Part shown: one piece after another, positions 1 through 60,413 of the stretch
How the letters are laid out: every line of letters begins with the position of its first letter
Position numbering within the stretch: position 1 is the first letter of the stretch
Assembly: GCF_964204865.1 (NCBI RefSeq)
Contig: NC_135257.1
Location: 13,392,001-13,456,000, forward strand
Length of the DNA: 64,000 nucleotides
Direction of reading: 5' to 3'
Origin: Styela clava
Lineage: Eukaryota
Position numbers and translations under genes: made by a program
The notes under the pieces: model-generated
What the model saw: the letters and a program-made list of their open reading frames with translations, nothing else
The model's database searches: none
What the model was told of the DNA's origin: nothing

Positions 1-920
1 GAAACTTTTAGGGTTTGTTGGTAATAACAATTATCTAAATCTACAGCAATTCCCGATATTTTATATTTCTGTTATGAATAGTTTCAACGGAAAGTCTACA
101 CTCTACAGATATTTTAGCAATAATAGTTAAATCGGAAGTGTGCAATTGACATCCTTATTTATTCAAGTGATAGAACAGACTGTCCGTTCACATTTTGCAT
201 TCTGTAGGCCTATATATATTTGTGCACTTGTTGATGTTATATTTTCTAAAGAAGGCAATGTGAATACATAATTTTTTTGTTTATACTGTCTGGCTATGTG
301 GAACATGCATTGTTCCTTGGAAGAGGAGGCAAAATAGATCAATAGATTCACATTTTCAAGAAAATAGTTATTCATTTGTCCTTCATCCAGTCCTTTTACT
401 GTGCAAATATATAAAATTCTATCATATCCCAATTTTTGATGTTTTATCATTGTAGTGCTATTTACACACACTTTTACAATTACAAATATAGGCTTCACTA
501 TATATATATACCGGTACTCTATCTAATGTACTGTGATATCCACCCCCAAAATATCAAACAACTATATTTTTGTTTAAATCTATTAACAATGAACTAAATT
601 TTTATCTTATCTTATCAAATTGTGAAGGATAAAAATGAATTCCTCTAGTTTCAAATTGCAAACAATAGCGTTGAAACATTTGCATCATGTCTTCATTGTA
701 TAATTTATAACTTGAATATAGCACAACATAATAACAATGAAACTGAAAGAGACATGGCATAAGACCTAATATTATATATATAAAAGTACTCCAGTAGTTT
801 TCTTACTGTTTTTATTTTTTTCTAGAATATAATAGTTGTACTAAATAGTATACTGCAGTATTATAATTCTTTTTAAATAGATATTTGTTCATCGTTATAC
901 CTCAGTATTGAATGATCTTG

Positions 921-2492
921 TCACTTCAAACTTTCCATCAACTCTGGATTTTCAACCGTTTTGGAAGGATAAAGTTGTACAATGATTCCTTTCTCAATGA
1001 GTTTGTTCCACATTAAACTAATTTGATGAATAGTTGGATTCAGGGTTGGAAATGCCACCCAGACAACCCATTCATCTGAAAAGATATTGATCCGATATCA
1101 ATACTGATATAAATCGCTCTAGGAATCTACACATATTCAATTGGTTTGTGTCACTTTTTTGAAATTTTGAAAGATTCGTTGTCTTATGTATAGCCTGGAG
1201 AGGAAAAAATAGTTTAGTCCGGTATTGCAGTTTTATAGTTGGTTGCTTTTCCCCCAATTTCCTTATGTGCAATGTGGTGCTACCTCCACTGGTGAGCAGG
1301 CATTCCTTGTGAATGAACGTCCTTGAATGTTTTTAAGTGGGTGATTTTAATTACTTACCGTACTCTTGAGTGAGTTTAATCCCTTATATTGTGAGTTCTA
1401 CCAATGCTACTGAGAGTAAATTGTCATTGAAACTAAATGAAAAGCGGAATAAAATACCTGAAAGACTGCAGAATGCATTGACCAAAAAATTCTTTTCGTC
1501 ACATAGAGCCAGAATATCACCATTGAATAAGGCATCATCTGAATATTAAAATGTTTTAACTTTTTGATTGTCAATGTATTTTACCATTGCCAATTTAATC
1601 TGTAAATTTAATTATACATTACCTATTTTTTTCGCTTTATCATTTGTTCCTCCATCTGGTGTTAGAGTGTGAGAAGCCAAAGCAGCTGGTTCTGTATCAA
1701 AATATTGAATTTTTTATTTCATTTTACCTATATAGGTATATTTAAAAATAATACCTTCACTCATTTCCCCATAATAAACGCCGTCTCTTCGTTTGGTCGT
1801 ATGACTTGTAAAGGTTTGGGGAGGAGAACTGAAATAAAGTAAAATGTACAATTACATATCTTCTGGTTTTGAATGCAGCTTTGTTTGGGTTGGACACTGA
1901 ATAGTCTGATCTTTCAATTCAAATGTAACTAAATTCACTTGTATACTTTAGTTTAAATATTGCAGTGTTAAATCATTGCTTCGTTTTTTTTTCAACTCTT
2001 TTCAATTTCTTTGAAATATATTATAAACATACTTCTCATGTAAATCAGTATGCACCATTCGCATTCCTTCATTTGTATTGGAGATATTCCGTAATCTTAC
2101 ACCTATAACATCTTCTTTCATGATCTCATCGTTGGTGTGTAGCACCAAGTACCAGTCATTCTTTACCTGCGCACAATAATAAGAAAGCCGAGTTCAGTGA
2201 AGATGTTGAAATCTCCAGATATACCATTGGGAGTATGGGAGATGAATGTATTTGAAGTCCTAATGTTGTTTTAATCAAGTTTTTGAAAAAAAGTGTAAGC
2301 GGATAATGAATGTTTCATATATATTAAAGATTGATTGAAGGTTAGGGCTTTACTATTTAATTATATACATACTTTATCCCAGTCGATATCTTCATTGTTC
2401 TCTGGAATTTTACATTTTTTTGCCTGGTTAATCTCGATGCCTATAGCAAGCATCAAAAGTGAAATACGCAATATGTTCTTCATGGTCATCAT
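921..2492 (-). CDS. Secreted lipocalin-like protein, array copy A (6 exons, 210 aa)
   Basis: Manual splicing: exons 2492-2373, 2166-2033, 1828-1755, 1691-1623, 1538-1458, 1075-921; all GT-AG, phases 0,2,1,1,1, open frame of 633 nt. Protein MMTMKNILRISLLMLAIGIEINQA-KKCKIPENNEDIDWDK|VKNDWYLVLHTND...LALCDEKNFLVNAFCSLS|DEWVVWVAFPTLNP...MESLK*. It has a signal peptide and an SCR1-like DWDK-x(4)-WY motif, and is colinear exon by exon with the canonical lipocalin at 43465-45489. Confidence 0.85.
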
Positions 2493-4641
2493 TTTATTTT
2501 AAAGCTGCTAAATCTTAGTTTTAAAAACCACAATTTTATGTACTTTCCTAACCCTGAAAACTTTTAAAGTTTATTGGTGAATTATCCAAATTTACAGCAA
2601 TTTGTGAGATTTCAGAATTAGATTATGAATAATTGAATCGAAAAGTCAATAGATACTGTAGCAATAATATTTGAATCGGAAGAGTGCAATTGACATCCTT
2701 ATTTATCCAAGTCATAGAACAGACTGTCTGTTACAGGTCTTGCATTCTGTACATATATTGGTGTTGTGAAGATGTTAAAGTTCCTGAAGAAGGCAGTGTG
2801 AAACGAGTATCGTATTTTTTTGTTTTGTTTATACTGTCTGGCTATGTGGAACATGCATTGTTACTTGTAAGAGGAGGCTAAAGAGATCAATAGATTCACA
2901 TTTTCAAGAAAATGTTTATTCATTTGTCATTCATTCGATCCTTTTTCTGTACAAATTCGTAGAATTCTATTATATCCTAATTTTTGATGTTTTATCATTG
3001 TAGTGCTATTTACACACACTTATACATTTACAAATATAAGCTTTAATAGATATATATATATGTATACTATATCTAATGTACTGTGATTTCCACCCCAAAA
3101 ATATCAAACAACAATTCAGTATCAGTAAGTCTGCTATTTTTGAAAATATTATTCTTCTGTATGCACAGTACCATAATATTGGGTTTGAACTGCAAATTCT
3201 TTTTCTTTGTCCACTACCTACTTGTATCTTACCCACAAGGAAACTTTAAGGACATGATTGAATGACAGTGGCAATTTTTTTCAACTATCGGTGACCAAAA
3301 TATTTGACCTAACGTGTGCCGGTTTTGGACAATATGACAACTTATTGTAGACATGAAATTTGAAAAATACTTAATCTATTGGAATGGCAGAATAAATATG
3401 GCATAATGCATTGTTTAATTGTTTTACAATATACTTTGCCATTTTTTTAAAAGGCGTAAGTTAATTCGAATAAATCACAAACAATATTAAATCTTAGGTT
3501 CTAACATCGACATCTGGTTTTTGGTTTACATCCATTTATCAGGTCAACTCATAGGGTGCGAAAAATCATGAAATGTAAAAGAAACATGATGCGTTTGTCA
3601 AAAACTGAAGGTTTTTGCAATTAGAAAACGCCAGTAATTTTTGTGTGCTAACTAGATCATAAAACTGAAAATGCAAAAATGATGCAATAACGAGTCTTCG
3701 CAGTGACATATTCATCACTGTCCTAGTTCTGATTATGCCGACTACATTTACGGTGCTTGGTGCCTACTACTTTTATGTGTGCTTTGCAATCGAACGCAAG
3801 TATAACCTAACAAGAAAGATTCAGACGCAAGAGAAACTGCTTTTCTATGAATATTAAATTAGATATCCAAATTACAAAAATCGCCACATGGTGCGAAGAT
3901 GCATAAACTGAATTGCAGTAACAGATCCCCCAGATTCAGTTATTCGAATTGTCCGTTCCTAGTCAAGTCACTGCAATAAGATAAAAAAAAAAGGGAGTGG
4001 AATATTTATGTCCATCTCATGTTGGCTGTGCAACAAAGCCTTTTACTCAACTATATAGCATTAGCATATTAATATGAGGCAGACACAAGCAGAAAGACAA
4101 AAAGACTTCGATGAGAGAGGAGGCAGAAAGGGAACAATAGATTCACGTTTCCATGAACATGTTAATACATTTAGGGGCTTCATCCATCTTTTTTTGTACA
4201 AACATTTAAATTCTATCATATCTAGTGTTTTGAACATGTGTTTTTGATATACTGATATACTTCATATGTGTTTAATTGTACTTTACAGGATTTTATTACA
4301 GATCTTGAGATTTTTCAAACACTGATAACGAATTCCCAAGGTCGCAACAATAAGTATCAAAACTAAATACAATTAGGCATGTTTATCTCATATTTTTATG
4401 TTAATGGATTGACGTGGTATTTTAGAGTAGTAATGTTCTTATTTTGGCGCAAAAACCGCGAGTTAAGTTGGCCACAATTATATTGATATAGAAATGAATT
4501 TTAGATTCTCGTAGCTGTCATGAATTGAATATGTTACGCGACAAAAAAGTCGATATGCGCTGAAATAGTCGGCTATTTTAACGAGCTCGTAATTGCGTCG
4601 ACTGTTTCAGAAGGAAATGGGAATTTCCGTTTTTGAAAATT

Positions 4642-4677
4642 GAGTGAAATAAACCTTATAATTGTCAAGGTTAGCAT
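4642..4677 (-). pseudogene. 5' remnant of a lipocalin array copy (ATG and ~12 codons; gene body lost)
   Basis: Reverse strand reads ATG CTA ACC TTG ACA ATT ATA AGG TTT ATT TCA CTC, matching the start of exon 1 (copy D: MLTLKNITFISL). It is followed on + by the conserved upstream block (4680-5240). Exons 2-6 are absent from 3110-4640. Confidence 0.65.
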
Positions 4678-5622
4678 TATATTTTAAGGCTGCTGAAACT
4701 TAGTTATGAAAACTACAGAATTACATCTTTTATAACCCCGAAAATTCTAGGGTTGGTTGGTGAGTTATCCAAATCTATAGCAATTCATGATATTTTATAA
4801 TTCTGTTATGAATAGTTTCAACGAAAAGTCTGCACTCTACAGATATTCTAGCAATAATAGTTAAATCGGAAGTGTGCAATTGACATTCCTACTTATCCAA
4901 GTCATAGAACAGACTGTCTGTTCATGTTTTGCATTCTTTACATATATTTGTGCACTTGATGTTATATTTTTTGAAGGAGACAATGTGAAAACATATTTTT
5001 TTTTGTTTATACCGTCTGGCTATGTGGAACATGCATTGTTCCATGGAAGAGGAGGCAAAAGAGATCAAGAATATGTTTATTCATTTGTGCTTCATCCAAT
5101 CCTTTTTTTGTACAAATATTTAGAATTCTATCATATTCTAATTTTTGATGTTTTATCATTGTAGTGCTATTTACACACACTCATACAATTACAAATAGAG
5201 GCTTCACTATGTATATATATACTCTATCTAATGTACTGTGATATCCACCCCCAAAATATCAAACAACTATATTTTTGTTGAAATCTATTAACAATGAACT
5301 AAATTTTTATCTTATCTCATCAAATTGTGAAGGATAAAAATGAATTCCTCCGGTTTCAAATTGCAAACAATAGCGTTGAAACATTTGCATCATGTCTTCA
5401 TTGTATAATTTACAACTTGAATATAACACAACATAATAACAATGAAACTGAAAGAGACATGGCATAATACCTAAAATTCTATATAAAAGTACTCCAGTAG
5501 TTTTCTTACTGTCTTTATTTTTTTTAGAATATAATAGTTGTACTAAATAGTATACTGCAGTATTATAATTCTTATTAAATAGATCTGTGTTCATCGTTAT
5601 AACTCAGTATTGAATGATCTTG

Positions 5623-7285
5623 TCACTTCAAACTCTCCATCAACTCTGGATGTGCAACCGTTTTAGAAGGATAAAGTTGTACAACGATTCCTTTCTCAAT
5701 GAGTTTGTTCCACATTAAACTAATTTGATGAATAGTTGGATTCAGGGTTGGAAATGCCACCCAGACAACCCATTCATCTGAAAAGATATTGATCCGATAT
5801 GAATACTGATATAAATCGCTCTAGGAATCTACACATATTCAATTGGTTTGTGTCACTTTTTTGAAATTTTGAAAGATTTGTTGTCTTATGTATAGCCTGG
5901 AGAGGAAAAAATAGTTTAGTAGGGTATTGCAGTTTTATAGTTGGTTGCTTTTCCCCCAATTTCCTTACATGCAATGTGGTGCTACCTCCACTGGTGAGCA
6001 GGCATTCCTTGTGAATGAACCTCCTTGAATGTTTTTAAGTGAGTGATTTTAATTACTTACGGTACTCTTGAGTGAGTTTAATCCCTTATATTGTGAGTTC
6101 TACCAATGCTACTGAGAGTAAATTGTCATTGAAACTAAATGAAAAGTGGCATAAAATACCTGAAAGACTGCAGAATGCATTGACCAAAAAATTCTTTTCG
6201 TCACATAGAGCCAGAATATCACCATTGAATAAGGCATCATCTGAATATTAAAATGTTTTAACTTTTTGATTGTCAATGTATTTTACCATTGCCAATTTAA
6301 TCTGTAAATTTAATTATACATTAGGTACCTATTTTTTTCGCTTTATCATTTGTTCCTCCATCTGGAGTTAGAGTGTGTGAAGCCAAAGCAGCTGGTTCTG
6401 TATCAAAATATTGAATTTTTTATTTCATTTTACCTATATAGGTATATTTAGAAATAATACCTTCGCTCTTTTCCCTATGATAAACGCCGTCTCTTCGTTT
6501 GATCCTATGGCTTGTAAAGGTTTGGGGAGGAGAACTGAAATAAAGTAAAATGTACAATTACATATTTTCTGTTTTTAAATGCAGCTTTGATTTGGGTTGA
6601 ACACTGAAATGTCTAATCTTCCAATTCAAATGTAACTGAATTCACTCGTATACTTTAGTTTGAATATTGCAGTGTTAGGTCATTTCTTCAGTTTTTTTTT
6701 ATGAAACTTGTTTCAGGTCATCTGAAATAAATTATAAACTTACTTCTCATGTAATTCAGTAATCACCATTCGCATTCCTTCATTTGTATTGGAGATATTC
6801 CGTAATCTTACACCTATAACATCTTCTTTCATGATCTCATCGTTGGTGTGTAGCACCATATACCAGTCATCCTTAACCTGCACACAACAATTATATGGTT
6901 TGCAATTTCTACTGAATAATTTCATTATGCAATGAGAGTTTTTCTAAATCTCAACTTCTAACACCTGTGACGCATTTGGAAAGTCGAGTTCAGTGAAGAT
7001 GTTGAAATCTCCAGATATATTATTGTGAGATGAATGTATTTGAAGTCCTCATGTTGTCTTAATCAAATTTTTGAAAAAAATGTAAGTGGATAATGAATGT
7101 TCCTTCTATATTGAAAATTGACTGAAGGTACCGGTAAAGGTTTTACTATTTAAATATATACATACCTTATCCCAGTCGATGTCTTCATTGTTCTCAGGAA
7201 TTTTACATTCTTTTGCCTGGTTAATCTCGATGCCTATAGCAAGCATCAAAAGTGAAATATGAAATATGTTTTTCAAGGTCAGCAT
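5623..7285 (-). CDS. Secreted lipocalin-like protein, array copy B (6 exons, 210 aa)
   Basis: ATG at 7285 (MLTLKNIFHISLLMLAIGIEINQAKECKIPENNEDIDWDK), exon 2 VKDDWYMVLHTNDEIMKEDVIG..., TGA at 5623-5625. Same exon structure as copy A and frame intact. Confidence 0.85.
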
Positions 7286-8380
7286 TTTATTTTAAAGCTG
7301 CTAAATAACTTAGTTCTATAAACTACAAAATTATGTACTTTTATAACCCGGCAAACTTTTAGGGTTTGTTGGTGAGTTCTCCAAATTTACAGCAATTTGT
7401 GAGATTTTATAATTCTGTTATAAATAGTTTCAACGAATGGACTATAGATATTTTAGCAATAATATTTAAACCGGAAGTGTTCAATTGACATCCTTACTTA
7501 TCCAAGTCATAGAACAGAGTGTCCGTTCACATTTTGCATTCTGTACATATATTTATGCACTCGATGATGTAATATTTTCCAAAGAAGGCAATGTGAATAC
7601 GTAATTTTTTTGTTTATACTGTCTATTGTGAGATGATATTGTAATGTTTAGTGTCTGTTCACGTTTTGCATCCTGTACATATATTTGTGCACTTGATGAT
7701 GTTATATTTTCTAAAGAAGACTATGTGAATACATGATTTTTTTGTTTATACTGCCTGGCTATGTGGAACATGCATTGTTCCTTGGAAGAGGAGGCAAAAG
7801 AGATCAATAGATTCACATTTTCAAGAATATGTTTATTCATTTGTGCTTCATCCAATCCTTTTTCTGTACATGTAGAATTCTATCATATTCTAATTTTTAA
7901 AGTTTTATCATTGTAGTGCTATTTACTCACATTTATCCAATTACAGATATAAGCTTAAATGAATATATATATATATATACTCTATCTAATGTACTGTGAT
8001 ATCCACCCCCAAAATATCAAACCACTATATTTTTGTTTAAATTTATTAACAATGAAATAAAATCTTTAAATTATCTCATTAAATTAAGGACGATAAAGAT
8101 AAATTCCTCTAGTTCAAAATTGCAAACGATAGCGGTAAAACCTTTGCATCATCTCTTCATTGTATAATTTCCAACCTAAAGATAGCACAACATAATAACA
8201 ATAAAACTGAAAGGGACATGGCATAAGACCTAAAATTCCAACACAAAGTACTTCAGTAGTTTTCTTTCTGTCTTTTTTTTTCTAGAATATAATAGTTGTA
8301 CCGAATAGTATACTGCAGTGTTATAATTTTAAATAAATGGATTTCTGTTCAAGGGGATAACTTAGTATTGAATGATCGTG

Positions 8381-10016
8381 TCACTTCAAACTTTCCATAA
8401 ACTCTGGATGTTCAACAGTTTTAGAAGGATACAGTTGTACAATGATTCCTTTCTCAATGAGCTTGTTCCACATCAAACTAATTTGATGAATAGTTGGATT
8501 CAGGCTTGGAAACGCCACCCAGACAACCCATTCATCTGAAAAGAAATTGCCCCGATATAAATCGCTCTAGGAATATACATATATGCGATTGATTTGTGTC
8601 ACTTTTTTGAAATATTTGTTGTTTTATGTACAGCCTGGAGAGGAAAGCTTAGTCTGGTCCGTTATTGCACTTTTAGTTGGTTGCTTCCCCCCCCCCCCCC
8701 AAGTTCCACCTCACACGCAATGTGATACTACCTTCACTAGTGAGCAGGCATTCCTTGTGAATGAACCTCTCAAGTAACTGATTTTTATTACTTACTAATT
8801 ATATTACTTAGTCTTGAGTGAGTTCAATTTCCTTCATTGTGAGTTCTATCAATGCTACTGAGAGGGAATTGTCATTGAAACTAAATGAAAAGCGGCATAA
8901 AATACCTGAGAGACTGCAGAATGCATAGACCAAATAATTCTTTTCATCACATAGAACCAGATTATCACCATCGAATAAGGCATCATCTGAATATTAAAAT
9001 GTTTTAACTTTTGGAATGTCAATGTATTTACTACCATCATCAATATATTCTGTAAATTCAATTATACATTACCTATTTTTTTAGCTTTATTATTTGTTCT
9101 TCCATCTGGTGTTAGAGTGTGTGAAGCCAAAACAGCTGGTTCTGTATGAAAATAATAAATTTTTTATTTCTTTTTTCATTCCAACTATATAGGTATATTC
9201 AAAAATGATACCTTCGCTCTTTTCCGCAAAATAAACGCCGTCTCTTCGTTTGGTAAAATCGAATGTTAAGGTTTGGGGAGGAGAACTGAAATAAAGTAAA
9301 ATTTACAATTACATATCTGCTGCTCTGATTTGGTTTGGAAACTGAGTATTCTGATCTGTCAATTCAAATGTAACTCAATTCACTTGTATTACTTTAGTCT
9401 GAATATTGCGGACTTTGTGGTGTTAAGTAATTTGTCCAGTTTTATTTTTTGAACTTGTTTCAGGTTATTTCAAATAAATTATAAACTTACTTCTCATGTA
9501 AATCAATAACCACTATTCGCATTCCTTCATTTGTTTTGGTAAAATTCCGGAATTTTGCACCTATAACATCTTTTTTCATGACCTCATCATTAGTGTGTAG
9601 CCCCTGATACCAGTCATTCTTAACCTGCACACAACAATATGGTTTTCAATTTCTACTCAATAATTTCATTATGCACTGCGAGTTTTACCAAATCTCAACT
9701 TCTAACACCTGTGACACATTTGGAAAGTTGAAAGTTTGGAAAGATATATTATTGTGAGATAATTTTCTTGAAGTCCTAATGTTGTCTTAATCAAATTTTT
9801 GAAAAAAGTGTAAGCGGAAAATGAAAAATGTTTCAAATATATTAAAAATTGACTGGAAGTGAAGGTTTTACTATTTCATTATATAGGCCTACATACCTTA
9901 TCCCAGTCGATGTCTTCATTGTTCTCTGGAATTTTACATTCTTTTGCCTGGTTAATCTTGATGCTTATAGCAAGCATCAAAAGTGAAATACACAATATGT
10001 TTTTTAAGGTCTGCAT
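8381..10016 (-). CDS. Secreted lipocalin-like protein, array copy C (6 exons, 210 aa)
   Basis: ATG at 10016 (MQTLKNILCISLLMLAISIKINQAKECK...), exon 2 VKNDWYQGLHTNDEVMKKDVIGAKFRNFTKT..., TGA at 8381-8383. Frame intact. Confidence 0.85.
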
Positions 10017-10983
10017 TTTATTTTAAAGCTGCTAAATCTTAGTTTTAAAAATCACAAAATTATGTACTTTCATAAACCTGAAAACTTTTAAAGTTTGTTG
10101 GTGAGTTATCCAAATTTACAGCAATTTGTGAGATTTCAGAATTAGATTATGAATAATTGCATCGAAAAGTCAATAGCTACTGTAGCAATAATATTTGAAT
10201 CGGAAGAGTGCAATTGACATCCTCACTCATCCAAGTCGTAGAACAGACTGTCTGTTACAAGTCTTTCATTCTGTACATATATTGGTGTTGTGAAGATTTC
10301 ATATTTACCCAAAGAAGGCAGTGGGAAATGAGTATTTATTTTTTGTTTATACTGTCTGGCTGTGTTGAACATGCATTGTTCTTTGGAAGAGGAGGCAGAA
10401 GTGATCAATAGATTCACATTTTCAAGAAAATGTTTATTCATTTGTCATTCATCCAATCATTTTTCTGTACAAATATTTAGAATTCCATCATATATCCTAA
10501 TTTTTGATGTTTTATCATTGAAGTGCTATTACACACACCTATACAATTACAAATATAAGCTTTAATGGATATATATATATATACTCTATTTAATGTACTG
10601 TGATATCCACCCCCAAAATATCAAGCAACTATATTTTTGTTTAAATTTATTAACAATGAATTAAATTTTTATCTTATCTCATCAAATTGTAAAAATTAGA
10701 AATGAATTCCTTTAGTTTAAAATTGCAAACAAGAGCGTTGAAACATTTGCATCATGTCTTCATTGTATAATTTTCAACCTAATTATAGCACAACATAATA
10801 ACAATGAAACTGAAAGATACATGGAATAAGACCTCACATTCTATATAAAAGTACTCGCGTACTTTTCTTACTGTCTTTGTTTTTCTAGAATATAATAGTT
10901 GTACTAAATAATATACTGCAGTGTTATGATTTCTATTGAATGGATTTCTGTTCATGGTTATAACTTAGTATTGAATGATCTTG

Positions 10984-12609
10984 TCAGGTCAAACTTCCAT
11001 CAACTCTGGATGTTCAACAGTTTTTGAAGGATAAAGTTGTACAATGATTCCTTTTTCAATGAGCTTGTTTCACATTAAACTAATTTGATGAAAAGTTGGA
11101 TTCAGGGTTGGAAATTCCGCCCAAACAACCCATTCATCTGAAAAAACATCGAGCTAATATTAGGAATTTACATATATGCAAATGGTTTATGTCACTTGTT
11201 TGAAAGATTTGTTGTCCTATGTACAGCCTGGGAGGGAAAAATAGTCTGGTTAGTTATTGCACTTATAGTTGGTTGCTTTCCCCCTAATTTCCACCTCACA
11301 TGCAATGTGATACTACCTTCACTAGTGAGCAGGCATTTTTTGTGACTGTACCTACCAAGTGACTGATTTTTATTACCCACTAATTATAAAACTTACTCTT
11401 GAGTGAGTTTAATTCCCTCTATTGTGAGTTCTATCAATGCTGCTGAGAGCAAATTGTCATTGAAACTAAATGAAAAGTGGCGTAAAATACCTGAAAGACT
11501 GCAGAATGCATAGACCAAATAATTCTTTTTATCACATAGAGCCAGAATATCACCATTGAAAAGGCGTCATCTGAATATTAAAATGTTTCAACTTTTTGAA
11601 TGTCAATGTATCCATCACCATTCACCAATCTAATATACAAATTCAATTATACATTACCTATTTTTTAGCATTATTATTTGTTCCTCCTTCTGGTGTTAGA
11701 GTGTGTGAAGCCGAAACAGCTGGTTCTGTTTCAAAATATTGAATTCTTTATTTATTTTCGTTACATTTTAACTATATAGGTATATTTAAAAATGATACCT
11801 TCGCTCTTTTTTCCGTAATAAACGCCGTCTCTTCGTTTGGATGATTCGATTGTAAAGGTTTGGGGAGGAGAACTGAAATTAAGTAAAATGTACAATTACA
11901 TATCTTCTATTTTTGAATGCAGCTATGATTTTGGTTGGACACTTGAGTAGTATGATCTGCCAATTCGAATGTACGGTAACTGAATTCACTTGTATACTTT
12001 AGTTTGAATATTGCAGTGTTAGGTCATTTCTTCAGTTTCTTGTTTCAGGTCATCGGAAATATTTTATAAACTTACTTCTCATGTAATTCAGTAATCACCA
12101 TTCGCATTCCTTCATTTGTTTTGGAGATATTCCGTAATCTTACACCTATAACATCTTTTTTCATGACCTCATCATTGGTGTGTAGCACCATATACCAGTC
12201 ATCCTTAACCTGCACACAACAATTATATGGTTTACAATTTCTACTGAATAATTTCATTATGCAATGAGAGTTTTGCTAAATTTCAACTTTTAACACCTGT
12301 GACACATTTGGAAAGTCGAGTTCAGGGAAGATGTTGAAATCTCCAGATATATTATTGTGAGATGGATGTATTTGAAGTCCTAATGTTGTCTTAATCAAAT
12401 TTTTGAAAAAAGTCTAAGCGAATAATGAATGTTGTATTTATTTTAAAAATTGATTGATTGAAGGTTTTACTATTTAATTATATACCTACCTTATCCCAGT
12501 CGATGTCTTCATTGTTTTCTGGAATTTTACATTCTTTTGCCTGGTTAATCTCAATGCTTATAGCAAGCATCAAAAGTGAAATAAATGTTATGTTTTTCAA
12601 GGTTAGCAT
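10984..12609 (-). pseudogene. Lipocalin array copy D, probable pseudogene
   Basis: Exons 1-3 are intact. Relative to copies A-C there is a 1-nt deletion in exon 4 (6 vs 7 T at ~11661), a 1-nt deletion in exon 5 (~11560), TGG->TGA at 11070-11072 in the ancestral frame, and a further 1-nt deletion near the stop. Confidence 0.8.
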
Positions 12610-12674
12610 TTGTTTTAAAGCTGCTAAATTCTAGTTCTATCAACTATAAAATTAAATATTTTCATACCCTAGTT

Positions 12675-13525
12675 CAGTGGTCTTCAAACTTTTTGAGACA
12701 CGACCCCATCTACAATATTATTACGTATGATAAGCACTCGCATCCCGAGTTATATACATATATATGTTCACCTACAGACACGAAAAAAATATTTATCAAA
12801 TTCGGAAATTTATTAAAAGAACCCAACAACAACCATATTTATTCAGTGTGAAGAATGCGACTGCTTCTTTCCAACGAGATCTTGCATTCGTGGCTTAATG
12901 TTGCTTAAGGTCAAACGCAAATCCTGTTCTACGTTTAATCGATTTCGGTGCTTTGATTTAGGCAGACTCATAGCACTAAAAGTCAAGCTTTCAAAAAGAT
13001 TGATCATACGATATTTTTCTTTTATGTTTATCAGCCATTTAATAAATTGTAATTATCAATATGACGGTAGGCTGGAAAATGAGGCTTTGCAGTAAAAGCA
13101 ACGGCCACTGTACAGTACATTTAAGACACAATAACGATTTACTTTAAAATATAAATTACTGTCGTTAAGCAATAGCCTTTTTATAAAAGAAGTCACTCCA
13201 ATTCGAAATATTGAAACTTGCTAGCCTATGTAGCGTTATTCAACTTAACAGTGCAGACTACACGCTGTTGTGTATTTGTGTCATAGAACGCTGTTTTTCA
13301 CACGGACTAAATTTGTGATTATGATGTCATAATTGATTTATCGTAATTGCTCTTGGTATTACCTGCTTGTTATTCATATTTTTGCTTGAAGTATCTAGCG
13401 TTTAGCCGAGAAGTCACACACATAATAAAAATAATAAAAGAAATGACAACGATGGGCACTCGGCACCCCAGAAATATATAAGGCGACCCCACTTGGGGTC
13501 GCGACCCACACTTTGGTGACCACTG
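12675..13525 (-). mobile_element. Non-autonomous hAT (Buster/Charlie-type) element with a transposase C-terminal remnant
   Basis: TIRs CAGTGGTCTTCAAAC / CTTTGGTGACCACTG; perfect 8-bp TSD CCCTAGTT (12667-12674, 13526-13533) with central TA. The minus strand at ~12990-12844 encodes ...FSAMSLPKSKHRNRLNVEQDLRLTLSNIKPRMQDLVGKKQSHSSH*, typical of Buster/ZBED5/SCAND3 transposase C-termini. Confidence 0.9.
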
Positions 13526-15911
13526 CCCTAGTTGATTGTGATATTTCAGAATTATTTTATGCATATTCGCAATGTCTAAAAAAGTTTATACACATACTGT
13601 AGAAATACTATTCAAATCGGAAGAGTGCAATTGACATCCCTATATATCCAAGTCCTAGTACAGACTGTCCGTTACAAGTTTTGCATTCTGTACATATAAT
13701 TGTGCACTTGATGACGTTATATTTTATAAGAAAGCAGTGTGAAATAAGTATTTTTTTGTTTATATTGTCTGGCTATGGGGAACATGCAAAAGAGATCAAT
13801 AGATTCACATTTCCAAGAATATGTATATTCATATGTGCTACATCTACCGTAATTCTTTCCTGTACAAGTATGTAATTTAATCGTATCCCAATTTTCAATG
13901 TTTCATCATTGCAGTGCTATTTCTTAGGGATGGGACGAGATTCGGACTCGAATTTCGAGTCCACGTCATTTTTACTGAGTTCCGATTCAATTCTCTTTTT
14001 ATTGATTGACGCTTGGGTTATGCGAGTTCACCTTCATAAAAGTCAGTATATGCAATATTTGAATGAAAAAATGTGAATCTTCACTTAAGCTCTCTAAAAA
14101 TATTGTACATGTCGTATCACAGGCTCTTATCAGACAAATTTAATTCATTTCATCGCTAATGACCACATACCACATTAACCAATAAATTACTCTTCGCACA
14201 CAAAATAGAAAGTGGAGCACCCCAAGGGAAATTCTATTAACACTATTTCCAAGTACAGCGCGTTCCATTTTGCTGTAAACACCTTTAAATCGGTGTTATG
14301 ATAATTCCTTTTTTGTACTTGCACGTAACGTGAGAGTCATTATATAATCATAGGTGATGAGATAAATAAAGGGGTGAATTTGCAAGCCAAATTTTCCACT
14401 TTGAAAAGCGTTATTATAAAATACTAACTAAAATGAAAAATTATCGTTTTATTTAAAAAAGGAATTTTTTGAGGTTTTACACCATATTAACTAATATTTC
14501 AGTGTAGTGTAGTTTACAGGCTTCAGAAAGCAATGACTTGTACCAACTGTATCATAAAATGACTTGATCACCTGTCTGTGTGTGCAGATGTACATGGGTA
14601 CAATTGAACTGGGTCAAATTTAAATGAGGGAAAATGTCAGCAGGTGCATATGTATGTCTGTGCAAATGTCTGCTGGTGCGAATACCTATGGGTGCAAACA
14701 ATCATGAATGCAAATGTCTGTGAGTGCAATCTTATATGGGTGTTAATGTGTTTGTTCAATTGTCAATGGATGAGAATGTCCGCAGGTACAAAAGTATAGA
14801 ATGTCCGCAGGTACAAAAGTATACAGTTGCTGTTGTTCTAGGTGCAGTTAATGGTACCGATATAAGTATGTGGGTGCAAAGCTTTTTTTTTGGTATAATA
14901 ACCATTTTGGGTAAATGATGTTATTTTGTGATGAAATGTTTAAGAAAATATTACAAAAGATGTACCGTAATATCATTTTTGTTTATACTTGCAAAATATG
15001 TGGCAAAATCTCTATGACATACCGGTAATAGCATGGTGATCATAAAGCTGACCCCTGAAGTAATCAATAAATTTGGGAAGCTCTTTGTTGTTAATTTGAT
15101 TTGTGTATCTAAAAGACTTTAATACTTCCTTGTGCACTTCATGATTATTGCATCTCAGTTGTTGGAATTTTATCTTATACCCAATCTGATATTTTTATTT
15201 TTTATAAATGCAAGATTATGAAAATCTTTTGACTTTCTTATTTTTTTTAAGTCAACTTCTCTACATCTACTTTCAACTATCCTTCTAAAGAAGTATTCAC
15301 ATAAACTTTGAATTTTCAAGTTATTTGTAGCTTCACTATATTCATCCATGATAATGTAGTTGAATATCACCTGCCCACTAAATATTATATTGCCTCGAAA
15401 ATACATATTAAAGTTTGGATATTTTTGCCTATCTCTAGCTAGGAAACTTTTGCCATTTCCAAAACTCATCTTCATATTTTAGCCTACCTATTTCAACTAA
15501 ATAACTTTTGCCACTCCCATATTATCTCATCTCCCATCATTTGCGGGAATATAATTGAAATGACAAATATTGATTTTCTATTTAAATATGTCGCCTGTGA
15601 TAAATACCATTATGGAATTTAAAAAGAAAATATTTTCTCTGACAAACATACACCTTGTTCTATGATTGTGTTGCGTAATCTATTTTCATTTTAAGCTCAA
15701 AAATGTACTTTAATGGTCATTATTCAAGGAAAAACTTTCTACAAATTTGATTATCCGAAGCAATAAATTTTTGAACTTGTTTCAATTATGATAATCATAT
15801 TATTAAACATTAGAGCGCAATTGTGAATACAGTTAAAATAGTAAATTTCACCAAATTTCTGTTTCCTAATTTACGAAAAATGTGGATTATAATGAATTAC
15901 TTTGCTTACAG

Positions 15912-18900
15912 GATAAAGAATATTTGCAAAAGCAGCTCAATGATGCAACAGCTAAATTGGACACCAGTTCTGAATTGTTGAAGAGAACAGAAGATCAGTT
16001 AGAAAATGCAAAGAAAGCTCGAGAAGAATTGTATGAGAAATATGTTTCATCCAGAGATGAAAATAGACTTGAATACGAGAGAAGACTGCAAACAGAATTG
16101 GATAGAATACGGTAAGTTTTTTTATATGACATATTTATGACCCTGAAATCTAACCCCAAATCCATCAAAACTGTATCCATAAAAAAAATATTCCAACTTA
16201 CCCAATATTTTTCACCATCAGGGGCAGCCCTGTCCTTACACCGACCTGCCGTGGTTACGGCACCAAAATTTTACCCGCCATTGGTTTTCAATTTGCTGTC
16301 GCGTTAACGGCAGCTCATCATTGTTTGTGCCAGCTAAAAAGTGAGTTGCCATAAGTTTAGCCATAGCGGCCAGCCATGGTTTGGAAATACCGCCATGGTT
16401 TTGCGGCAGCTTCAGAGGCATTGAAATACTTAAAGCTGCACTTGCAGTATGGAGCACTTTGAGAACTTATGTCCTACCCAATTTATTACACTTTAGCTGA
16501 GGTGCATGGGATTTTAATCTGCGATGCTAAAATAGTTATATTTATCGCTTTAACAACTAGGCCACCACTCCCACTTGAAATCATTATTAATAGAGTATTA
16601 CTGAATCAATTATAGTTAGTCCATAGATGAGAAAAATTTGTATCAATAATTGAATATTAAATACAGAGCATAGCCCAAGATAGTGTGAATTAGAGTAAAC
16701 AGAATATAAAAAAAATGAAATTTAAGTGGACTGAATTTTCAATGTTATCCTGGCGATTTACACCAACCCTAAGTATTTTTAGAAAAATTGATATCAAACA
16801 GCGTAAAAATGCTGTTTTAAGATAGATTGTGGATTGGGAAAAATTTACAATTGACCTTGGTTCCAAGTTTATTAAAAATTTTTACTCCAGCTCTGATTTC
16901 CTAATGAAATAAAATTTTTATAATGAATGTTTGGGCGTGCACCAGCCTTTTTTAATAGACTGTTATGAATTATGACCTCAATTATTATTGTAAAAGGCGG
17001 AAATTCCAACTCTCACGTCTGACTCTGTGGATTTCAAATTTTGCTATAGAAAGTTTTAGAATGCGGCTCTGGGTTTTATTCCAATGAAAACATGTCAAAC
17101 TTTCGACTCTGCAGCGCCGGTTTTTAAGTGTGACTCGTATCTAATAATATACTTTTCCTATTAATTAATATACCAGGATGCAGACTGATACTGAAATTGG
17201 TAAACTTCAGACTGATACGAAAGAATCATATGAAAGAGAGAATCGTGGTTTACGCGAGGCAAGAGATTTGGCCAATCAAGAACGCGATCAGGTATTGTAG
17301 TACTTGGGTAAATTTTCTACTGTTCCGATCATTGATAATTAAGTTTGGCATATATGTTATAAACGTATGGGGAGTGTAGACATTCATTTTCATCACTTGA
17401 TGGATCTAAATTTAGAATATTCCCTTTTCATTGGCTTGACTTGTCCAGAATTGAAACTTGTTTTGGACTTTATTTGAGTATTTTTTTTTAATGTTCATTT
17501 TTTTGCATTGGTTGCCCCTCTTGCCATCTTAATCACCGATCATCGAACCAATATTTTTCCCAAACCCACTATATCGTAATAAATATTTTGCTTGGAGATC
17601 ATTCTCCTTCATTTCTGAGTGAGTGCGTGACCATGTTTCGAGCAAATTTTTTTAATATCCGATTACATAAAAATCCTACTTAATTTTTTCGTGCTTCTGA
17701 TATATCTCAAGTTACTCATCTTGGATGATCATAACCATCTGTAACTGCATAATAGTATTTACTAGGAACAAATGGAATAAATAAAAGCTCAATATCTTTT
17801 GTTAAAAAAATTAAAATTACAATTGATGTTTTTTCCAGGCCGTAAAGTTTAGGGACGAAGCCGAGAAACGAAGTGAGAAGTATCTATCTGAACTCCGAGC
17901 TTTAGAAGCCAGTGTGGATTCTCGAATTAGTGATTTCCAAAATGAAGCTCGGACAAAATCATTTGAACTTGATAGGCTACAAGTGAGTAACATGAATTGG
18001 GTGTTCAATTTAATCAACGTCATGTTTTCCGTTCACAAGACTACCATGTCTAGGTTTTTAAGTAGGTCTTGTTGGACACAAAGTGTGTATTGTGTATATG
18101 TATAAGTTTCTGAAATTGGGACCTATGGTGTAAATGCTTTAAGATGAATAGATGGACATAAAGATGACAGCTTAGATTAATAAACTCAAAATATTATTTT
18201 TCAATTCTGCTTTTAACTTTAATTCAATTTTCCAGAAGTTTCATTTTGTTCTGAGTTAAACCTAAACAATATTTTGAATGTAAAATTGAATCTTACTATT
18301 TTTAGTTAATGTACGAAGAAACAAGCAAAAATCTTCTCAAGTCAAATGAAGATTGCGAAAGATTGAATAAAAAACTGGAGATTGTCACATTGGATTATAC
18401 TGAGTTAGAAAAAAGATCATCAGTCACAGAAACCGAACTCAAATCGGCAATCAGGGAAGCAGAAGCTAGATTGACATCATATGAAAAAATGGAAAAGGTA
18501 ACGAGGCAAATTTATGGCTTGAAATCGAAACATTTTGATGAGGTATGCAAATGATGTGCACCTACAAAACAGATTGGAAATTGATTGCTCAGTCTGGCCT
18601 AAATAATTGGAAAAAGTGGTGAATTTTATGAATTCTTCTTGCAGTTAAATGAACATAGGAAAGTAGTTTGGTATATCAGTGGTTCCTGACCTTTTTCAGC
18701 GCTATTGATCTCCTTGATAATTTTATTAGGTTTGGGTACCCTTCTTAATAAAAACAAGTAGTCTCGGCTTGAAACATTATTTTATCAAAATCGCACAAAG
18801 AAAGCGAAGACACTCAAAATTTAAAGGGTGATATAAGATGTGCTCTGTCAAAAATTCCTTGCATAGTTGAGGTACCCAAGACCAAATATTATTAGTAAAC

Positions 18901-43464: not shown

Positions 43465-45489
43465 ATGGTCTTCATCAGCTTGACATCGATCCTGACTATT
43501 TGTTTCGTGTCTACGACAGTCGGTAAGCCACGAATTGAAAATGGAAAAGAAAAGTGCACTTTGCCAATTTTCGACGAGGTCAATTATAACATGGTAAGGT
43601 AATTTAACTGAAGCTGAAATTACAATGTCTCTTCATATACAGTAAATTTCGGATAACTTCATGATTAAGAATGCCATAGCGAGCAAAAAAAAATGTTTTC
43701 GCCAGTTACTACAAGCGTTTATCCGTTCATTGATCATTGAAAAAAAGATTCACGAAAAAATGTTCCATTGATAAAAATAAGAATAAAACCAAAAAATACC
43801 CACAAAGTTTGCTATTGTAGAACGATTCGAATAGAGCAAGAGTAAACAAAGTGAGACCGTTGTATCGTTTTAGCTTCCTCATTCTTGGTATCACATCCTG
43901 AACACAAACGATCCCGTTGAACACCACGTCCCATGTTATGCATTCCTATTCTTCCACGATTCTCACGACGACGATTCCTACGGAGAATTTCAAGATATTT
44001 CCTCGGCAGAAAAGTGAATACATTTTAATTCGTTTTAATGATTATAATTCTATTTTTGACTAAGTTTTTTTGAAACGCCGTACATATTGTTATATATATA
44101 CTGTATTACACATGGAAATGATATTTACCTTGGACTAGTGGTATTTTAACTTAAGAAAGGAAAATAACTCGATACGATATTGGGTTTACGTTATAAAACG
44201 CTTTTCATTGAAAATTAAATTTCAATGAAAAATTCCCTGAATATGATCGCCTCGATTTTCTTCGATTCTCATCGATTTGCGCAAACAACTTAATATTTCA
44301 TTTTGAAAGATGTATCGACGGCTGTTATTCCAAATTCTGTTGTGAAACCAATAAAAAATAAGTGTTTGTCGCAATAGTTTGTGAGCAAAATTACATATAG
44401 TTCAATTGATCCGTCGAACCCAACACCCAACGAAAGTTTGTGCACCCATCAGAATACAATATATATACATTTCAAATATTTTCTTTATGATAATATGCTT
44501 CTCTATTTTTGCAGGGGTGCAATAAGATTTAGTGGGGTAATACCAGTTCATTGGTATCATAACGGAAGCTCTATCATTAGATTTGACGAAAAGTTTGGTT
44601 TGTAAAATTATGATTTATCCAACTGTAATTCTTCGCCGTGAAATATTTCCTTGATAATGATATTTTCTGATCTAGAATACTTGTGGTTGAATGAAGCAAA
44701 AAATAACGGAGCCGGAGATAACGCATTTGCAGGTATACATGACGGTCGACCGTCTTCTCTCGTTGCGTGTATTGTTACGTGCATCAATGTTTGTATTACA
44801 CAAAAACTCCATATTGCTGCGCAACACTGCAAACCTCGGCGGATACTCCTTTGTTACAAAGCTAATGACCTAATATTACTAGGGTGTTTATGAGATGACG
44901 AGGGTATTGGATTAAAATTTTACAAACACGGAACTAAAAATTTTCTTAGAATTTAGTGTCCTCACCTGTTTAGGAGTGTGTGCATTATGTTGTATAGCAA
45001 ACCACTATATTTTCTTTAAAGACGGGGGTGCCACTTAAAAAGATAAGAAATATCACATTCTTTATTCTTCATCAAAGATGCGACTAATTTTCAGATTGAA
45101 TGATGAAAACACATTTTTATATAAAAATTGTGAACCTGCCGTTTTATTATCTTTACAGAAATTAAAAACTTTTACGATCGACCCATGAGTTGTTTTACAG
45201 ATTATGAGCGTTATTTTATGTGCTTGCAATGCAACCACTTAGGTAAGTATCATTTGGTGATATTCCTTGTTTGTTCCACACTTATTCGAATCATTAAGTT
45301 GAATATTTATCTCGCACTGTTTCAGGTAAACGTTACATATGGATCCACAGCCGCAATCCGCATCCCAGCGCACAAGATATTTTACGAGCTCGAAATAAGC
45401 TTGTTGAAATTGGCGACGGCTGGAGCTCAGTTCCACTGCACTTATCCGACTGCCGTAATTTTGACGAACCAGAAAAATTTTCCTATTAA
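43465..45489 (+). CDS. Secreted ApoD-like lipocalin (6 exons, 218 aa)
   Basis: Exons 43465-43593, 43874-44013, 44515-44597, 44676-44732, 45159-45242, 45326-45489 (phases 0,2,1,1,1; 657 nt). Signal peptide MVFISLTSILTICFVSTTVG; KCTLP..VNYNM|LPHSWYHI (SCR1-like), FTDYERYFMCLQC (SCR2 TDY), YIWIHSRNP (SCR3), C-terminal Cys in LSDC. Not recovered by the ORF track. Confidence 0.88.
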
Positions 45490-60323: not shown

Positions 60324-60413
60324 AATGCTTTATTGATAAAATTAGTTCAACAGTATTTATAAAATATAAAAAAAAAAATGAATGGCTGAGTATTGAACTG
60401 TCACTGACATAAC

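What the first reader, a model, noticed from the sequence alone, without database searches (positions are those of the whole stretch)
1..12609. Hidden tandem array of divergent secreted lipocalins invisible to the ORF track
Seen: the ~2.6-kb repeat encodes a spliced 6-exon, 210-aa signal-peptide protein in three intact copies (A, B, C), plus a pseudogene, a remnant and the flank of another copy beyond position 1. Established: lipocalins carry SCR1 (GxW), SCR2 (TDY) and SCR3 (W/L-x-x-SR) motifs. Here these are altered to DDW/NDW, CDE and WVAFP. Inference: they are outlier lipocalins, identifiable mainly through exon-by-exon colinearity with the canonical gene at 43465 (WYMVLHTND vs WYHILNTND; RNKLVEIG vs WNKLIEKG; identical phases 0,2,1,1,1). 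This looks like a recently amplified, lineage-specific family of small-ligand carriers (pigment, pheromone, lipid or immune); the ligand is unknown. It is the best candidate for an undescribed system in this window.
Basis: partly seen in the sequence, partly recalled or inferred. Interest (0 to 1): 0.85.

Follow-up and report, generated by a model that had tools for sequence, protein, structure and literature searches.

The report
Sea-squirt tandem array of divergent lipocalins
The first 12.6 kb of this Styela clava (sea squirt) window hold a tandem array of expressed six-exon genes for small secreted proteins with a predicted lipocalin ligand-binding barrel; they belong to a family of about 80 loci that public databases list only as "uncharacterized".

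Summary
Window 1-12,609 carries a minus-strand tandem array. It has three intact 6-exon, 210-aa genes (c1 921-2492, c2 5623-7285, c3 8381-10016) and one pseudogene (c4 10984-12609). A spacer (2560-4740) is mostly transposon copies. A fifth copy lies just upstream of the window. All introns are GT-AG with phases 0,2,1,1,1. Spliced contigs from two studies reproduce nine of the ten junctions of c2 and c3 as joints and the tenth as a contig end.

The lipocalin reading is supported:
- The c1 product is identical to a RefSeq protein named "uncharacterized".
- Its AlphaFold model (pLDDT 88) matches only lipocalins: sandercyanin Z 15.1, ApoD 14.6, crustacyanin about 14.
- A family profile finds lipocalins in 19 of 20 PDB hits.
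- The exon/phase pattern is the chordate lipocalin one.

Pfam thresholds are not met. Of the three lipocalin motifs only the Trp and the Asp survive, so these are outlier lipocalins. A predicted 32-residue two-helix insert sits in the E-F loop. The ligand is unknown.

The genes are not absent from public annotation. This scan already reported the same family on another array of this genome (s1-819797). Verdict: a new member of a known kind, of moderate interest.

The parts
921..2492 (-). c1: intact 6-exon lipocalin-like gene, start to stop. Exons 2492-2373, 2166-2033, 1828-1755, 1691-1623, 1538-1458, 1075-921. Product 210 aa.
   Evidence: Read from the sequence; GT-AG; phases 0,2,1,1,1. All six exon peptides are found in order in P0017 = XP_077971098.1. 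AlphaFold model with pLDDT 88.3.
5623..7285 (-). c2: intact copy. Exons 7285-7166, 6877-6744, 6534-6461, 6397-6329, 6240-6160, 5777-5623.
   Evidence: Alignment to c1. Spliced contigs give four junctions as joints (two in both X5 and X7, one in X7 only, one in X5 only), and the E3-E2 junction as a contig end at 6744 that runs on into E3.
8381..10016 (-). c3: intact copy, the most divergent of the three. Exons 10016-9897, 9624-9491, 9285-9212, 9141-9073, 8986-8906, 8535-8381.
   Evidence: Alignment to c1. Four joints in X5 contigs, plus the E2-E1 junction as a contig end at 9626 that runs on into E1.
10984..12609 (-). c4: pseudogene. E1-E3 are open. E4, E5 and E6 each carry a 1-nt deletion, and E6 also has TGG>TGA.
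   Evidence: The E6 match with an internal TGA also appears. RefSeq isoform P0019 joins c4 E1-E3 to c3 E4-E6.
2560..4740 (.). It holds a duplicate of the unit's 3' flank (2653-3153) and two dispersed repeats (about 3200-4100 and 4230-4640), but no exon remains.
   Evidence: At least 20 dispersed copies at 74-80% identity lie on other chromosomes.
1..920 (-). 3' UTR and 3' flank of c1. Positions 31-603 recur in every unit. Beyond position 1 lie a second spacer and copy c0.
   Evidence: c0 is at L012:2226-3792, with all six exons open.
13516..13771 (.). Last fragment of the unit flank. It marks the end of the array.
   Evidence: Repeat families D8, D10 and D12; blastn matches at 13536-13922.
43465..45489 (+). 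My model: E1 43465-43593, E2 43874-44013, E3 44515-44597, E4 44676-44744 (uncertain), E5 45159-45242, E6 45326-45489. Product 222 aa, phases 0,2,1,1,1. It keeps TDY and SR but has HSW in place of G-x-W.
   Evidence: Read from the sequence. The family profile hits E6 (E 2.4e-4), E2 (2.5e-3) and E5 (0.28) in colinear order. No transcript evidence was obtained for this gene.

Best explanation
Window 1-12,609 is one of many tandem arrays of a large, fast-evolving Styela clava family of secreted outlier lipocalins related to the ApoD group.

**The protein.** Each intact gene (c1, c2, c3, and c0 just outside the window) is transcribed from the minus strand and spliced from six exons. It encodes a 210-aa precursor with an N-terminal signal peptide of about 24 residues and an N-x-S/T sequon that is conserved across the family. 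The mature protein of about 186 aa is predicted to fold as an eight-stranded antiparallel barrel followed by a C-terminal helix, which is the lipocalin calyx.

**Lipocalin hallmarks.** The SCR1 Trp (W45) and the SCR2 Asp (D146) are kept. The SCR1 Gly, the SCR2 Thr and Tyr, and the SCR3 Arg (here Pro169) are lost. A predicted 32-residue two-helix hairpin (residues 107-138, largely exon 4) sits in the E-F loop, at the open end of the barrel.

**Function (inferred).** The most likely role is extracellular binding and carriage of a small hydrophobic ligand in the calyx. I could not determine the ligand.

**Evolution.** The array grows and changes by unequal crossing-over, gene conversion and pseudogenisation. 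Amino-acid change is concentrated in strands A-E (exons 2-3), while exons 4-6 are more constrained.

**Shown:** repeat structure, gene models, splicing, identity to RefSeq models, predicted fold, family size. **Inferred:** secretion, ligand binding, the role of the insert.
For: - **Gene models and splicing.**. Word depth on the exons reaches about 500-650 in X5.
- **Identity to RefSeq.** c1 equals P0017/XP_077971098.1, exon by exon.
- **Fold of c1.** AlphaFold gives pLDDT 88.3 and pTM 0.83. Every Foldseek row listed is a lipocalin, led by ApoD at E 1.4e-6. VIA gives sandercyanin Z 15.1 (157 aligned, rmsd 3.1), ApoD 14.6, crustacyanins 13.6-14.1, BBP 13.4 and RBP4 13.3.
- **Fold of a distant paralogue.** P0009 gives the same architecture, including both inserted helices. 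It scores Z 16.0 to sandercyanin at 20-21% identity.
- **Sequence.** With the family profile A3, 19 of 20 PDB hits are lipocalins. The SCR1, SCR2 and SCR3 regions align to bilin-binding protein (best E 0.0089).
- **Language-model features.** The nearest clusters that carry a Pfam family all carry lipocalin-type ones (lipocalin, triabin, RBP4, ApoD-like, VDE), scoring 0.90-0.94.
- **Gene structure.** Six coding exons with phases 0,2,1,1,1 match amphioxus Ambp/ApoM/Ptgds/Rbp4 and vertebrate ApoM and Ptgds (PMC3184775).
- **Constraint.** dN/dS is 0.19-0.47 in E4-E6 and 0.39-0.84 in E2+E3. For c1 against c3, synonymous change exceeds nonsynonymous change (Fisher p = 0.005).
- **Cysteines.** A strand-B Cys and a C-terminal Cys are present together in 8 distant members and absent together in 7 array-type members of alignment A3. 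This is what a lipocalin-type disulfide lost as a pair would look like.
Against: - No Pfam lipocalin model reaches its threshold on any member. The best is P0014 at E 0.0096, and P0017-type proteins give no hit at all.
- Pfam PF00061 and PF08212 find nothing usable in the genome when searched exon by exon.
- The structures are predictions from a 15-sequence alignment, nearly all of it from one species.
- The RNA nature of runs X5 and X7 is the tool's guess. Tissue and stage are hidden by coded run names.
- No ligand, cavity analysis or binding data exist.
- dN/dS over whole genes is high (0.37-0.99), so constraint is weak in part of the protein.
Confidence: 0.87

Rival explanations
1. The proteins have the lipocalin fold but act mainly by binding macromolecules or microbes rather than carrying a small endogenous ligand. 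In this reading they form a diversified secreted recognition or defence repertoire, comparable to tick salivary lipocalins or siderocalins.
For: The family is large and tandemly arrayed, with birth and death of copies. Variable sites cluster in strands A-E: 22 of 61 positions against 9 of 71 in the remainder, p = 0.002. dN/dS in E2+E3 is two to three times that in E4-E6, and reaches 2.55 in one pair. Expression is very high in one sample.
Against: No pair other than c2-c3 shows dN/dS above 1, and the counts behind that value are small. Gene conversion of the 3' half explains part of the pattern: introns 3-5 of c1 and c2 differ by only 0-3%. There are no induction or binding data. The nearest structural neighbours are small-ligand binders.
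Confidence: 0.2
2. The copies are young, effectively neutral duplicates on their way to becoming pseudogenes. Their transcription would then say nothing about function.
For: c4 is already broken. Whole-gene dN/dS for c0 against c1 is 0.99. Divergence in the exons is similar to that in the introns.
Against: Four copies keep all six frames and all splice sites. dN/dS is 0.19-0.47 in E4-E6 against paralogues at dS up to 0.46. The same fold-defining residues are invariant across members only 23-30% identical. Contig depth is high.
Confidence: 0.05
3. The proteins are not lipocalins. The match would then reflect a generic beta-barrel (another calycin such as FABP, avidin or triabin) or a modelling artefact.
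For: Pfam thresholds are not met. SCR3 Arg and SCR1 Gly are absent. P0002 weakly hits Triabin at E 0.018.
Against: All 50 VIA rows for each of the two models are lipocalins, and they cover residues 22-210. The architecture of eight strands plus a C-terminal helix is the lipocalin one, whereas FABPs have ten strands (my own knowledge). The profile search aligns SCR1-3 colinearly. The intron phases match lipocalin genes.
Confidence: 0.03

Closest known systems
ApoD-group lipocalins: human apolipoprotein D, walleye sandercyanin, lobster crustacyanins, Pieris bilin-binding protein
   Same: These are the best structural matches: Z 13.4-15.1 for c1 and 14.0-16.0 for paralogue P0009, with about 150-159 residues aligned. 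They are secreted, eight-stranded barrels with a C-terminal helix. The SCR1 Trp and SCR2 Asp are conserved. Distant paralogues keep TDY-type motifs and two cysteine pairs. The motif after the Trp resembles that of crustacyanin, but this is from memory and is only a lead.
   Different: Identity is only 11-13% for c1. SCR1 Gly, SCR2 Thr and Tyr, and SCR3 Arg are replaced. One cysteine pair is lost in the array subfamily. There is a predicted 32-residue two-helix insert in the E-F loop. No Pfam match reaches threshold. The ligand is unknown.
Chordate lipocalin genes of the Ptgds/ApoM type, and amphioxus Ambp/ApoM/Ptgds/Rbp4
   Same: [quoted passage not shown]
   Different: No sequence-level orthology was shown. 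I could not compare intron positions residue by residue with those genes.
The single lipocalin reported for the tunicate Ciona intestinalis (LCN_Cint)
   Same: It is a tunicate lipocalin. Diez-Hermano et al. 2021 used it as outgroup and reported it as the only one that PSI-BLAST detected in Ciona (PMC8420045).
   Different: Styela clava carries about 79 credible last exons of this family on 12 chromosome-scale contigs. No relative labelled Ciona was recovered, so the relation to LCN_Cint is untested.
Tandemly expanded lipocalin repertoires such as rodent major urinary proteins and tick salivary lipocalins
   Same: Lineage-specific tandem arrays, pseudogenes among intact copies, fast protein evolution, and weak or absent motif conservation (general knowledge, plus PMC5008119 as listed).
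   Different: Different clade and different biology. No function is known here.

Membership tests
Lipocalin superfamily (calycin) | Eight-stranded antiparallel up-and-down beta-barrel with a C-terminal alpha-helix | tested here: met
   In the AlphaFold model of P0017 (= c1), the strands are 45-50, 62-70, 74-83, 86-99, 102-105, 140-145, 151-156 and 162-168, with a helix at 175-187. Foldseek and VIA match lipocalins only, with Z up to 15.1. P0009 gives the same result. This is a prediction, not a solved structure.
Lipocalin superfamily (calycin) | SCR1: G-x-W at the start of strand A | tested here: inconclusive
   The Trp is invariant in the family (W45) and aligns to the bilin-binding protein Trp. 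The Gly is replaced by N or D in c1-c3. It is present only in P0014 (G-F-W).
Lipocalin superfamily (calycin) | SCR2: T-D-Y in the F-G loop | tested here: inconclusive
   The Asp is invariant (D146). The array copies have C-D-E. Distant paralogues have TDY, SDY or ADY, and the gene at 43465 has TDY.
Lipocalin superfamily (calycin) | SCR3: conserved Arg at the end of strand H | tested here: not met
   c1-c3 and most family members have F-P at this position (F168-P169). The Arg is kept in the gene at 43465 and in P0014 and P0009. By Flower's definition (my own knowledge) this makes the array proteins outlier lipocalins, not kernel ones.
Lipocalin superfamily (calycin) | Pfam Lipocalin (PF00061) or Lipocalin_2 (PF08212) above the gathering score | tested here: not met
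   P0017-type proteins give no hit. The best family hits are P0014 at E 0.0096 (16.6 bits against a cut-off of 23) and P0006 at 0.13. Single exons give nothing.
Lipocalin superfamily (calycin) | Chordate lipocalin gene structure: six coding exons with intron phases 0,2,1,1,1 | tested here: met
   for c1-c3, with splice junctions confirmed. The pattern is as described in PMC3184775.
Lipocalin superfamily (calycin) | Secreted: N-terminal signal peptide | tested here: inconclusive
   The N-terminus has basic residues followed by a hydrophobic stretch (residues about 8-19) and a small residue before K25. These residues are modelled as a low-confidence helix outside the barrel. The conserved N67-x-S/T69 sequon fits the secretory route. 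No signal-peptide predictor was available.
Lipocalin superfamily (calycin) | Binds a small hydrophobic ligand in the calyx | not testable with these tools

The most novel reading that the evidence does not exclude
The Styela family would be a naturally diversified repertoire of secreted binders, a new structural subclass of lipocalins with a two-helix lid in the E-F loop and variation focused on strands B-D. The animal would use it for recognition of microbial or environmental molecules, or for self/non-self chemistry. Tunicates, thought to have a single lipocalin, would then have independently built one of the largest lipocalin repertoires known in animals.
Probability: 0.12. Interest if true: 0.65.

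Novelty: new member of a known kind. Interest (0 to 1): 0.4.

Why it matters
A recent survey of lipocalin evolution detected a single lipocalin in the tunicate Ciona and used it as the outgroup for all vertebrate lipocalins (PMC8420045). This work assigns a lipocalin fold to five genes in this array. By profile search, it extends to about 79 loci in Styela clava that public databases call "uncharacterized" and that Pfam does not recognise.

This changes the picture of lipocalin content in the sister group of vertebrates. It also supplies divergent sequences that could improve lipocalin profiles. The predicted helical insert at the mouth of the barrel is a testable structural variant. It does not reveal a new kind of system, because tandemly expanded, motif-poor lipocalin families are well known in other animals.

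Tried and rejected
- **Pfam on single exons.** Nothing for the array gene or for the exons of the gene at 43465. A 63-aa open frame over that gene's last exon gave only Lipocalin_2 at E 0.2.
- **Pfam families against the whole genome.** PF08212 gave no hit and PF00061 gave one hit at E 1.78 elsewhere. Exon-split genes are too short for these models.
- **PDB sequence search with single-exon profiles.** E6 and E2 profiles gave only spurious hits: PsbY, IL-10 and designed minibinders.
- **The search for homologous proteins with P0014.** Only the query itself was returned, so no bridge to named lipocalins in other species was found.
- **Literature.** Searches for Styela plus lipocalin, for the LOC identifiers, and for Styela gene-family expansions found nothing relevant.
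- **The look-up of encoding contigs.** The origin of P0014 and the public gene calls around the array could not be looked up.
- I re-ran the same computation by reading the exons from the data files.
- **The joined step.** I did not splice the exons into one typed protein. I searched exon by exon, by reference, and then used the database protein P0017, which contains all six c1 exon peptides in order.
- **Reading rejected: the spacer is a decayed gene copy.** It contains no exon similarity and is mostly dispersed repeats.
- **Hits rejected as family members.** The 34 hits at E above 1.1e-5, most of them of near-equal score and with an internal TGA, were not counted. They look like a dispersed repeat.
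Full report
**1. What is in the sequence**

The window is AT-rich (GC 0.29-0.39). It is G000:C9:13,392,001-13,456,000 of a 377-Mb assembly. Database names of the encoded proteins identify the organism as the ascidian Styela clava.

Direct-repeat analysis of 1-16,000 finds 18 repeat families with start-to-start spacings of about 2.55-2.76 kb and about 4.7 kb. Blast of the six candidate exons of the first unit finds four full copies, with all exons in order. I call them c1 (921-2492), c2 (5623-7285), c3 (8381-10016) and c4 (10984-12609). All are on the minus strand.

**2. Gene model**

I read c1 from the minus strand. The exons are:
- E1 2492-2373 (120 nt)
- E2 2166-2033 (134 nt)
- E3 1828-1755 (74 nt)
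- E4 1691-1623 (69 nt)
- E5 1538-1458 (81 nt)
- E6 1075-921 (155 nt, including TGA)

Every intron is GT-AG. c2 and c3 keep every splice site and every frame. c4 has 1-nt deletions in E4, E5 and E6 and a TGG>TGA change in E6, so it is a pseudogene in this assembly.

A fifth copy, c0, lies 2.2-3.8 kb before the window start (L012:2226-3792), with all exons open.

**3. The spacer**

It consists of a duplicate of the unit's 3' flank plus two dispersed repeats that occur on many chromosomes at 74-82% identity. c0 plus its spacer and c1 plus its spacer form a 4.7-kb higher-order duplication at 94.8% identity.

**4. Transcription and splicing**

One run search returned nine small runs guessed to be RNA, from three studies, plus DNA runs. 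Run names and organism names are coded.

I laid contigs of X1, X2, X5 and X7 on window 5400-10300. This gave joints with CT..AC ends, which is GT..AG on the minus strand, at exactly the predicted exon borders:
- c2: 5777>6160 and 6240>6329 in both X5 (study P2) and X7 (study P3); 6397>6461 in X7 only; 6875>7164 (cut +2) in X5 only.
- c3, in X5 only: 8535>8906, 8986>9073, 9141>9212 and 9285>9491.
- The c2 E3-E2 and c3 E2-E1 junctions appear as contig ends that continue with the first or last letters of the neighbouring exon.

Word depth on the exons reaches about 500-650 in X5. X1 and X2 carry low-depth contigs that run through introns, which could be pre-mRNA or DNA.

Caveats: the RNA label is the tool's guess, contigs cannot give strand or level, and the tissue is unknown. 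One X7 contig joins c2 E2 to c3 E1. This may be a chimeric transcript or an assembly switch between paralogues.

**5. Getting a full-length protein without joining exons**

I left the joined step out. Single exons gave nothing in Pfam or in PDB sequence searches.

A profile of the last exon from 14 paralogues (A1) was run against 1.84 billion representative proteins. It returned 16 hits, 11 of them proteins of 147-214 aa that match over their C-terminal residues. A search with the best hit, P0001, in the named collection then returned 14 Styela clava proteins. All are called 'uncharacterized protein LOC...' and none has a Pfam domain.

P0017 (XP_077971098.1, LOC120346750 isoform X1, 210 aa) contains all six c1 exon peptides at offsets 0, 40, 85, 110, 133 and 160. 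It is therefore the c1 product, and RefSeq already holds this exact model.

**6. Is it a lipocalin?**

Five lines of evidence agree.
- **Fold.** AlphaFold2 on a 15-sequence family alignment (A3) gives pLDDT 88.3 and pTM 0.83. The model has eight strands, a C-terminal helix at 175-187 and a short final strand. Foldseek against the PDB counts 358 matches at E<=1e-3, and every row listed is a lipocalin: ApoD, beta-lactoglobulins, DigA16/BBP, alpha-1-acid glycoprotein, L-PGDS, Ex-FABP, tick HBP, Per a 4. VIA-align gives sandercyanin Z 15.1 (157 aligned, rmsd 3.1), ApoD 14.6, crustacyanins 13.6-14.1, BBP 13.4, RBP4 13.3 and Blc 13.0, covering residues 22-210.
- **Second model.** The distant paralogue P0009 (30% identical to c1) gives the same architecture (pLDDT 86.3). 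It scores Z 16.0 to sandercyanin at 20-21% identity and 15.7 to ApoD. The same alignment was used for both models, so this is not an independent test.
- **Sequence.** The A3 profile against PDB sequences returns 20 hits at E<=10, and 19 of them are lipocalins (best DigA16 at E 0.0089). The N-terminal P...D...W segment, the D-x-K-N-Y segment and the W-V segment align to SCR1, SCR2 and SCR3 of bilin-binding protein.
- **Language-model features.** Several of the nearest clusters carry no Pfam family. Those that do all carry lipocalin-type families (lipocalin, triabin, RBP4, Lopap, ApoD-like, VDE), with scores of 0.90-0.94.

Against membership by curated models: no Pfam lipocalin family passes its cut-off on any member.

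**7. How it departs from typical lipocalins**

- **Motifs.** Across the family (A3) the invariant positions are W45, D53, T71, D146, C156, W165, P173 and G189. So the SCR1 Trp and the SCR2 Asp survive. In c1-c3 the SCR1 Gly is N or D, SCR2 reads C-D-E, and the SCR3 Arg is Pro169. By the kernel/outlier distinction (my own knowledge of Flower's definition) they are outlier lipocalins.
- **Cysteines.** Distant paralogues keep TDY-type SCR2 motifs and two extra cysteines, one in strand B and one near the C-terminus. These two cysteines are present together in 8 members and absent together in the 7 array-type members. That fits the loss of one lipocalin-type disulfide as a pair.
- **Insert.** Both models place two helices (107-117 and 127-138 in c1) between strands E and F with pLDDT above 90. 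About 32 residues of the 189 in the span 22-210 stay unaligned to ApoD-type structures. Loops E-F lie at the open end of lipocalin barrels (my own knowledge), so the hairpin may act as a lid. That is inference.

**8. Relation to the gene at 43465**

My manual model is E1 43465-43593, E2 43874-44013, E3 44515-44597, E4 44676-44744, E5 45159-45242 and E6 45326-45489. It totals 669 nt, giving 222 aa, with phases 0,2,1,1,1. E4 is uncertain because several acceptor/donor pairs fit.

I searched the A3 profile against all 2,792 stop-free stretches of window 13,000-64,000. This gene's E6 (E 2.4e-4) and E2 (2.5e-3) rank first and second, and E5 (0.28) ranks fourth, in colinear order.

It keeps TDY and S-R but has H-S-W in place of G-x-W, and it gives no Pfam hit by exon. 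So it is a distant and somewhat more conservative paralogue rather than a textbook lipocalin.

**9. Evolution of the array**

- **Overall rates.** Pairwise dS is 0.05-0.21, close to intron divergence (0.06-0.16). Whole-gene dN/dS is 0.37-0.99.
- **Split by region.** E2+E3 give dN/dS of 0.39-0.84, with one pair at 2.55 on small counts. E4-E6 give 0.19-0.47, including comparisons with paralogues on another chromosome at dS of about 0.45.
- **Variable sites.** Among c0-c3, variable sites are denser in strands A-E (22 of 61) than from strand F to the C-terminus (9 of 71; Fisher p = 0.002). Seven of the nine strand-B positions vary.
- **Gene conversion.** Part of this pattern comes from conversion. 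Introns 3-5 of c1 and c2 differ by 0-3%, while introns 1-2 differ by about 11%.
- **Conclusion.** The genes are under purifying selection, weaker in the first half of the barrel. Positive selection is not shown.

**10. Family size and range**

The E6 profile finds 113 places in the genome at E<=1e-3. Of these, 79 have E<=1.1e-5, and 74 of those have no internal stop. They lie in clusters on 12 chromosome-scale contigs (C1, C2, C5, C6, C8, C9, C13, C14, C16, C17, C18, C19). The other 34 are weak hits, most of near-equal score and with an internal TGA, and look like a dispersed repeat.

All named database relatives are from Styela clava. One member (P0014, with G-F-W) comes from an unnamed Logan contig.

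A 2021 survey detected a single lipocalin in Ciona (PMC8420045). I found no paper on Styela lipocalins.

This scan already reported the same family on another piece of this genome: finding s1-819797, a 13-gene array, with an estimate of about 100 loci. My count is compatible with that estimate but lower.

**11. Verdict**

The function beyond 'secreted lipocalin-fold protein' is inferred, and the ligand is unknown.

This is a new, divergent and expanded subfamily of a well-known superfamily, so I rate interest as moderate.

Noticed in passing
window 10984-12609 with 8381-9141: RefSeq isoform P0019 (LOC120346743 X2) consists of c4 E1-E3 joined to c3 E4-E6. A read-through transcript could therefore rescue the open 5' half of the pseudogene. 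P0023, from an older annotation, shows c4 E5-E6 as open, so c4 may be broken only in this assembly or haplotype.
   Followed up: partly
window 6744-6877 and 9897-10087: One X7 contig joins c2 E2 directly to c3 E1, skipping 3,019 nt, with 10 mismatches in the E1 part. This may be inter-copy splicing or an assembly switch between paralogues. The same contig carries 16 loose letters beyond 10087, which could be a further 5' exon or a trans-spliced leader.
   Followed up: no
window 3200-4100 and 4230-4640: Two dispersed repeats fill the spacer between c1 and c2. They have dozens of copies at 74-82% identity on many chromosomes, some of them inside the C16 lipocalin array (C16:8,733,057 and 8,739,887).
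   Followed up: partly
window 58740-60329 (-): A single-exon 530-aa open frame encodes a RED/IK protein (Pfam RED_N E 4e-94, RED_C E 8e-48).
   Followed up: partly
By that note (s1-826021), the lipocalin array would lie antisense in one of its introns. Pfam gave only weak coiled-coil-type hits.
   Followed up: no
window 20364-21185: A minisatellite that is open in several frames on both strands, with repeated units of about 14 residues.
   Followed up: no
window 34191-34568 and 37783-38178: Inverted copies of the same open frames, about 3.4 kb apart. This is consistent with the foldback-like element noted by another reader (s1-826119).
   Followed up: no
genome-wide, e.g. G000:C10:13909198-13909296: 34 weak hits of the E6 profile (most covering positions 7-39, mostly about 29-33 bits, nearly all with an internal TGA) are scattered over many chromosomes. 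They are probably a dispersed repeat that mimics part of the profile, not lipocalin genes.
   Followed up: no
P0014 (Logan contig of 1,385 nt; not in the window): This is the only family member not labelled Styela clava. It keeps G-x-W and an Arg near SCR3, and gives the best, still sub-threshold, Pfam Lipocalin score (E 0.0096). Its organism could not be looked up.
   Followed up: partly
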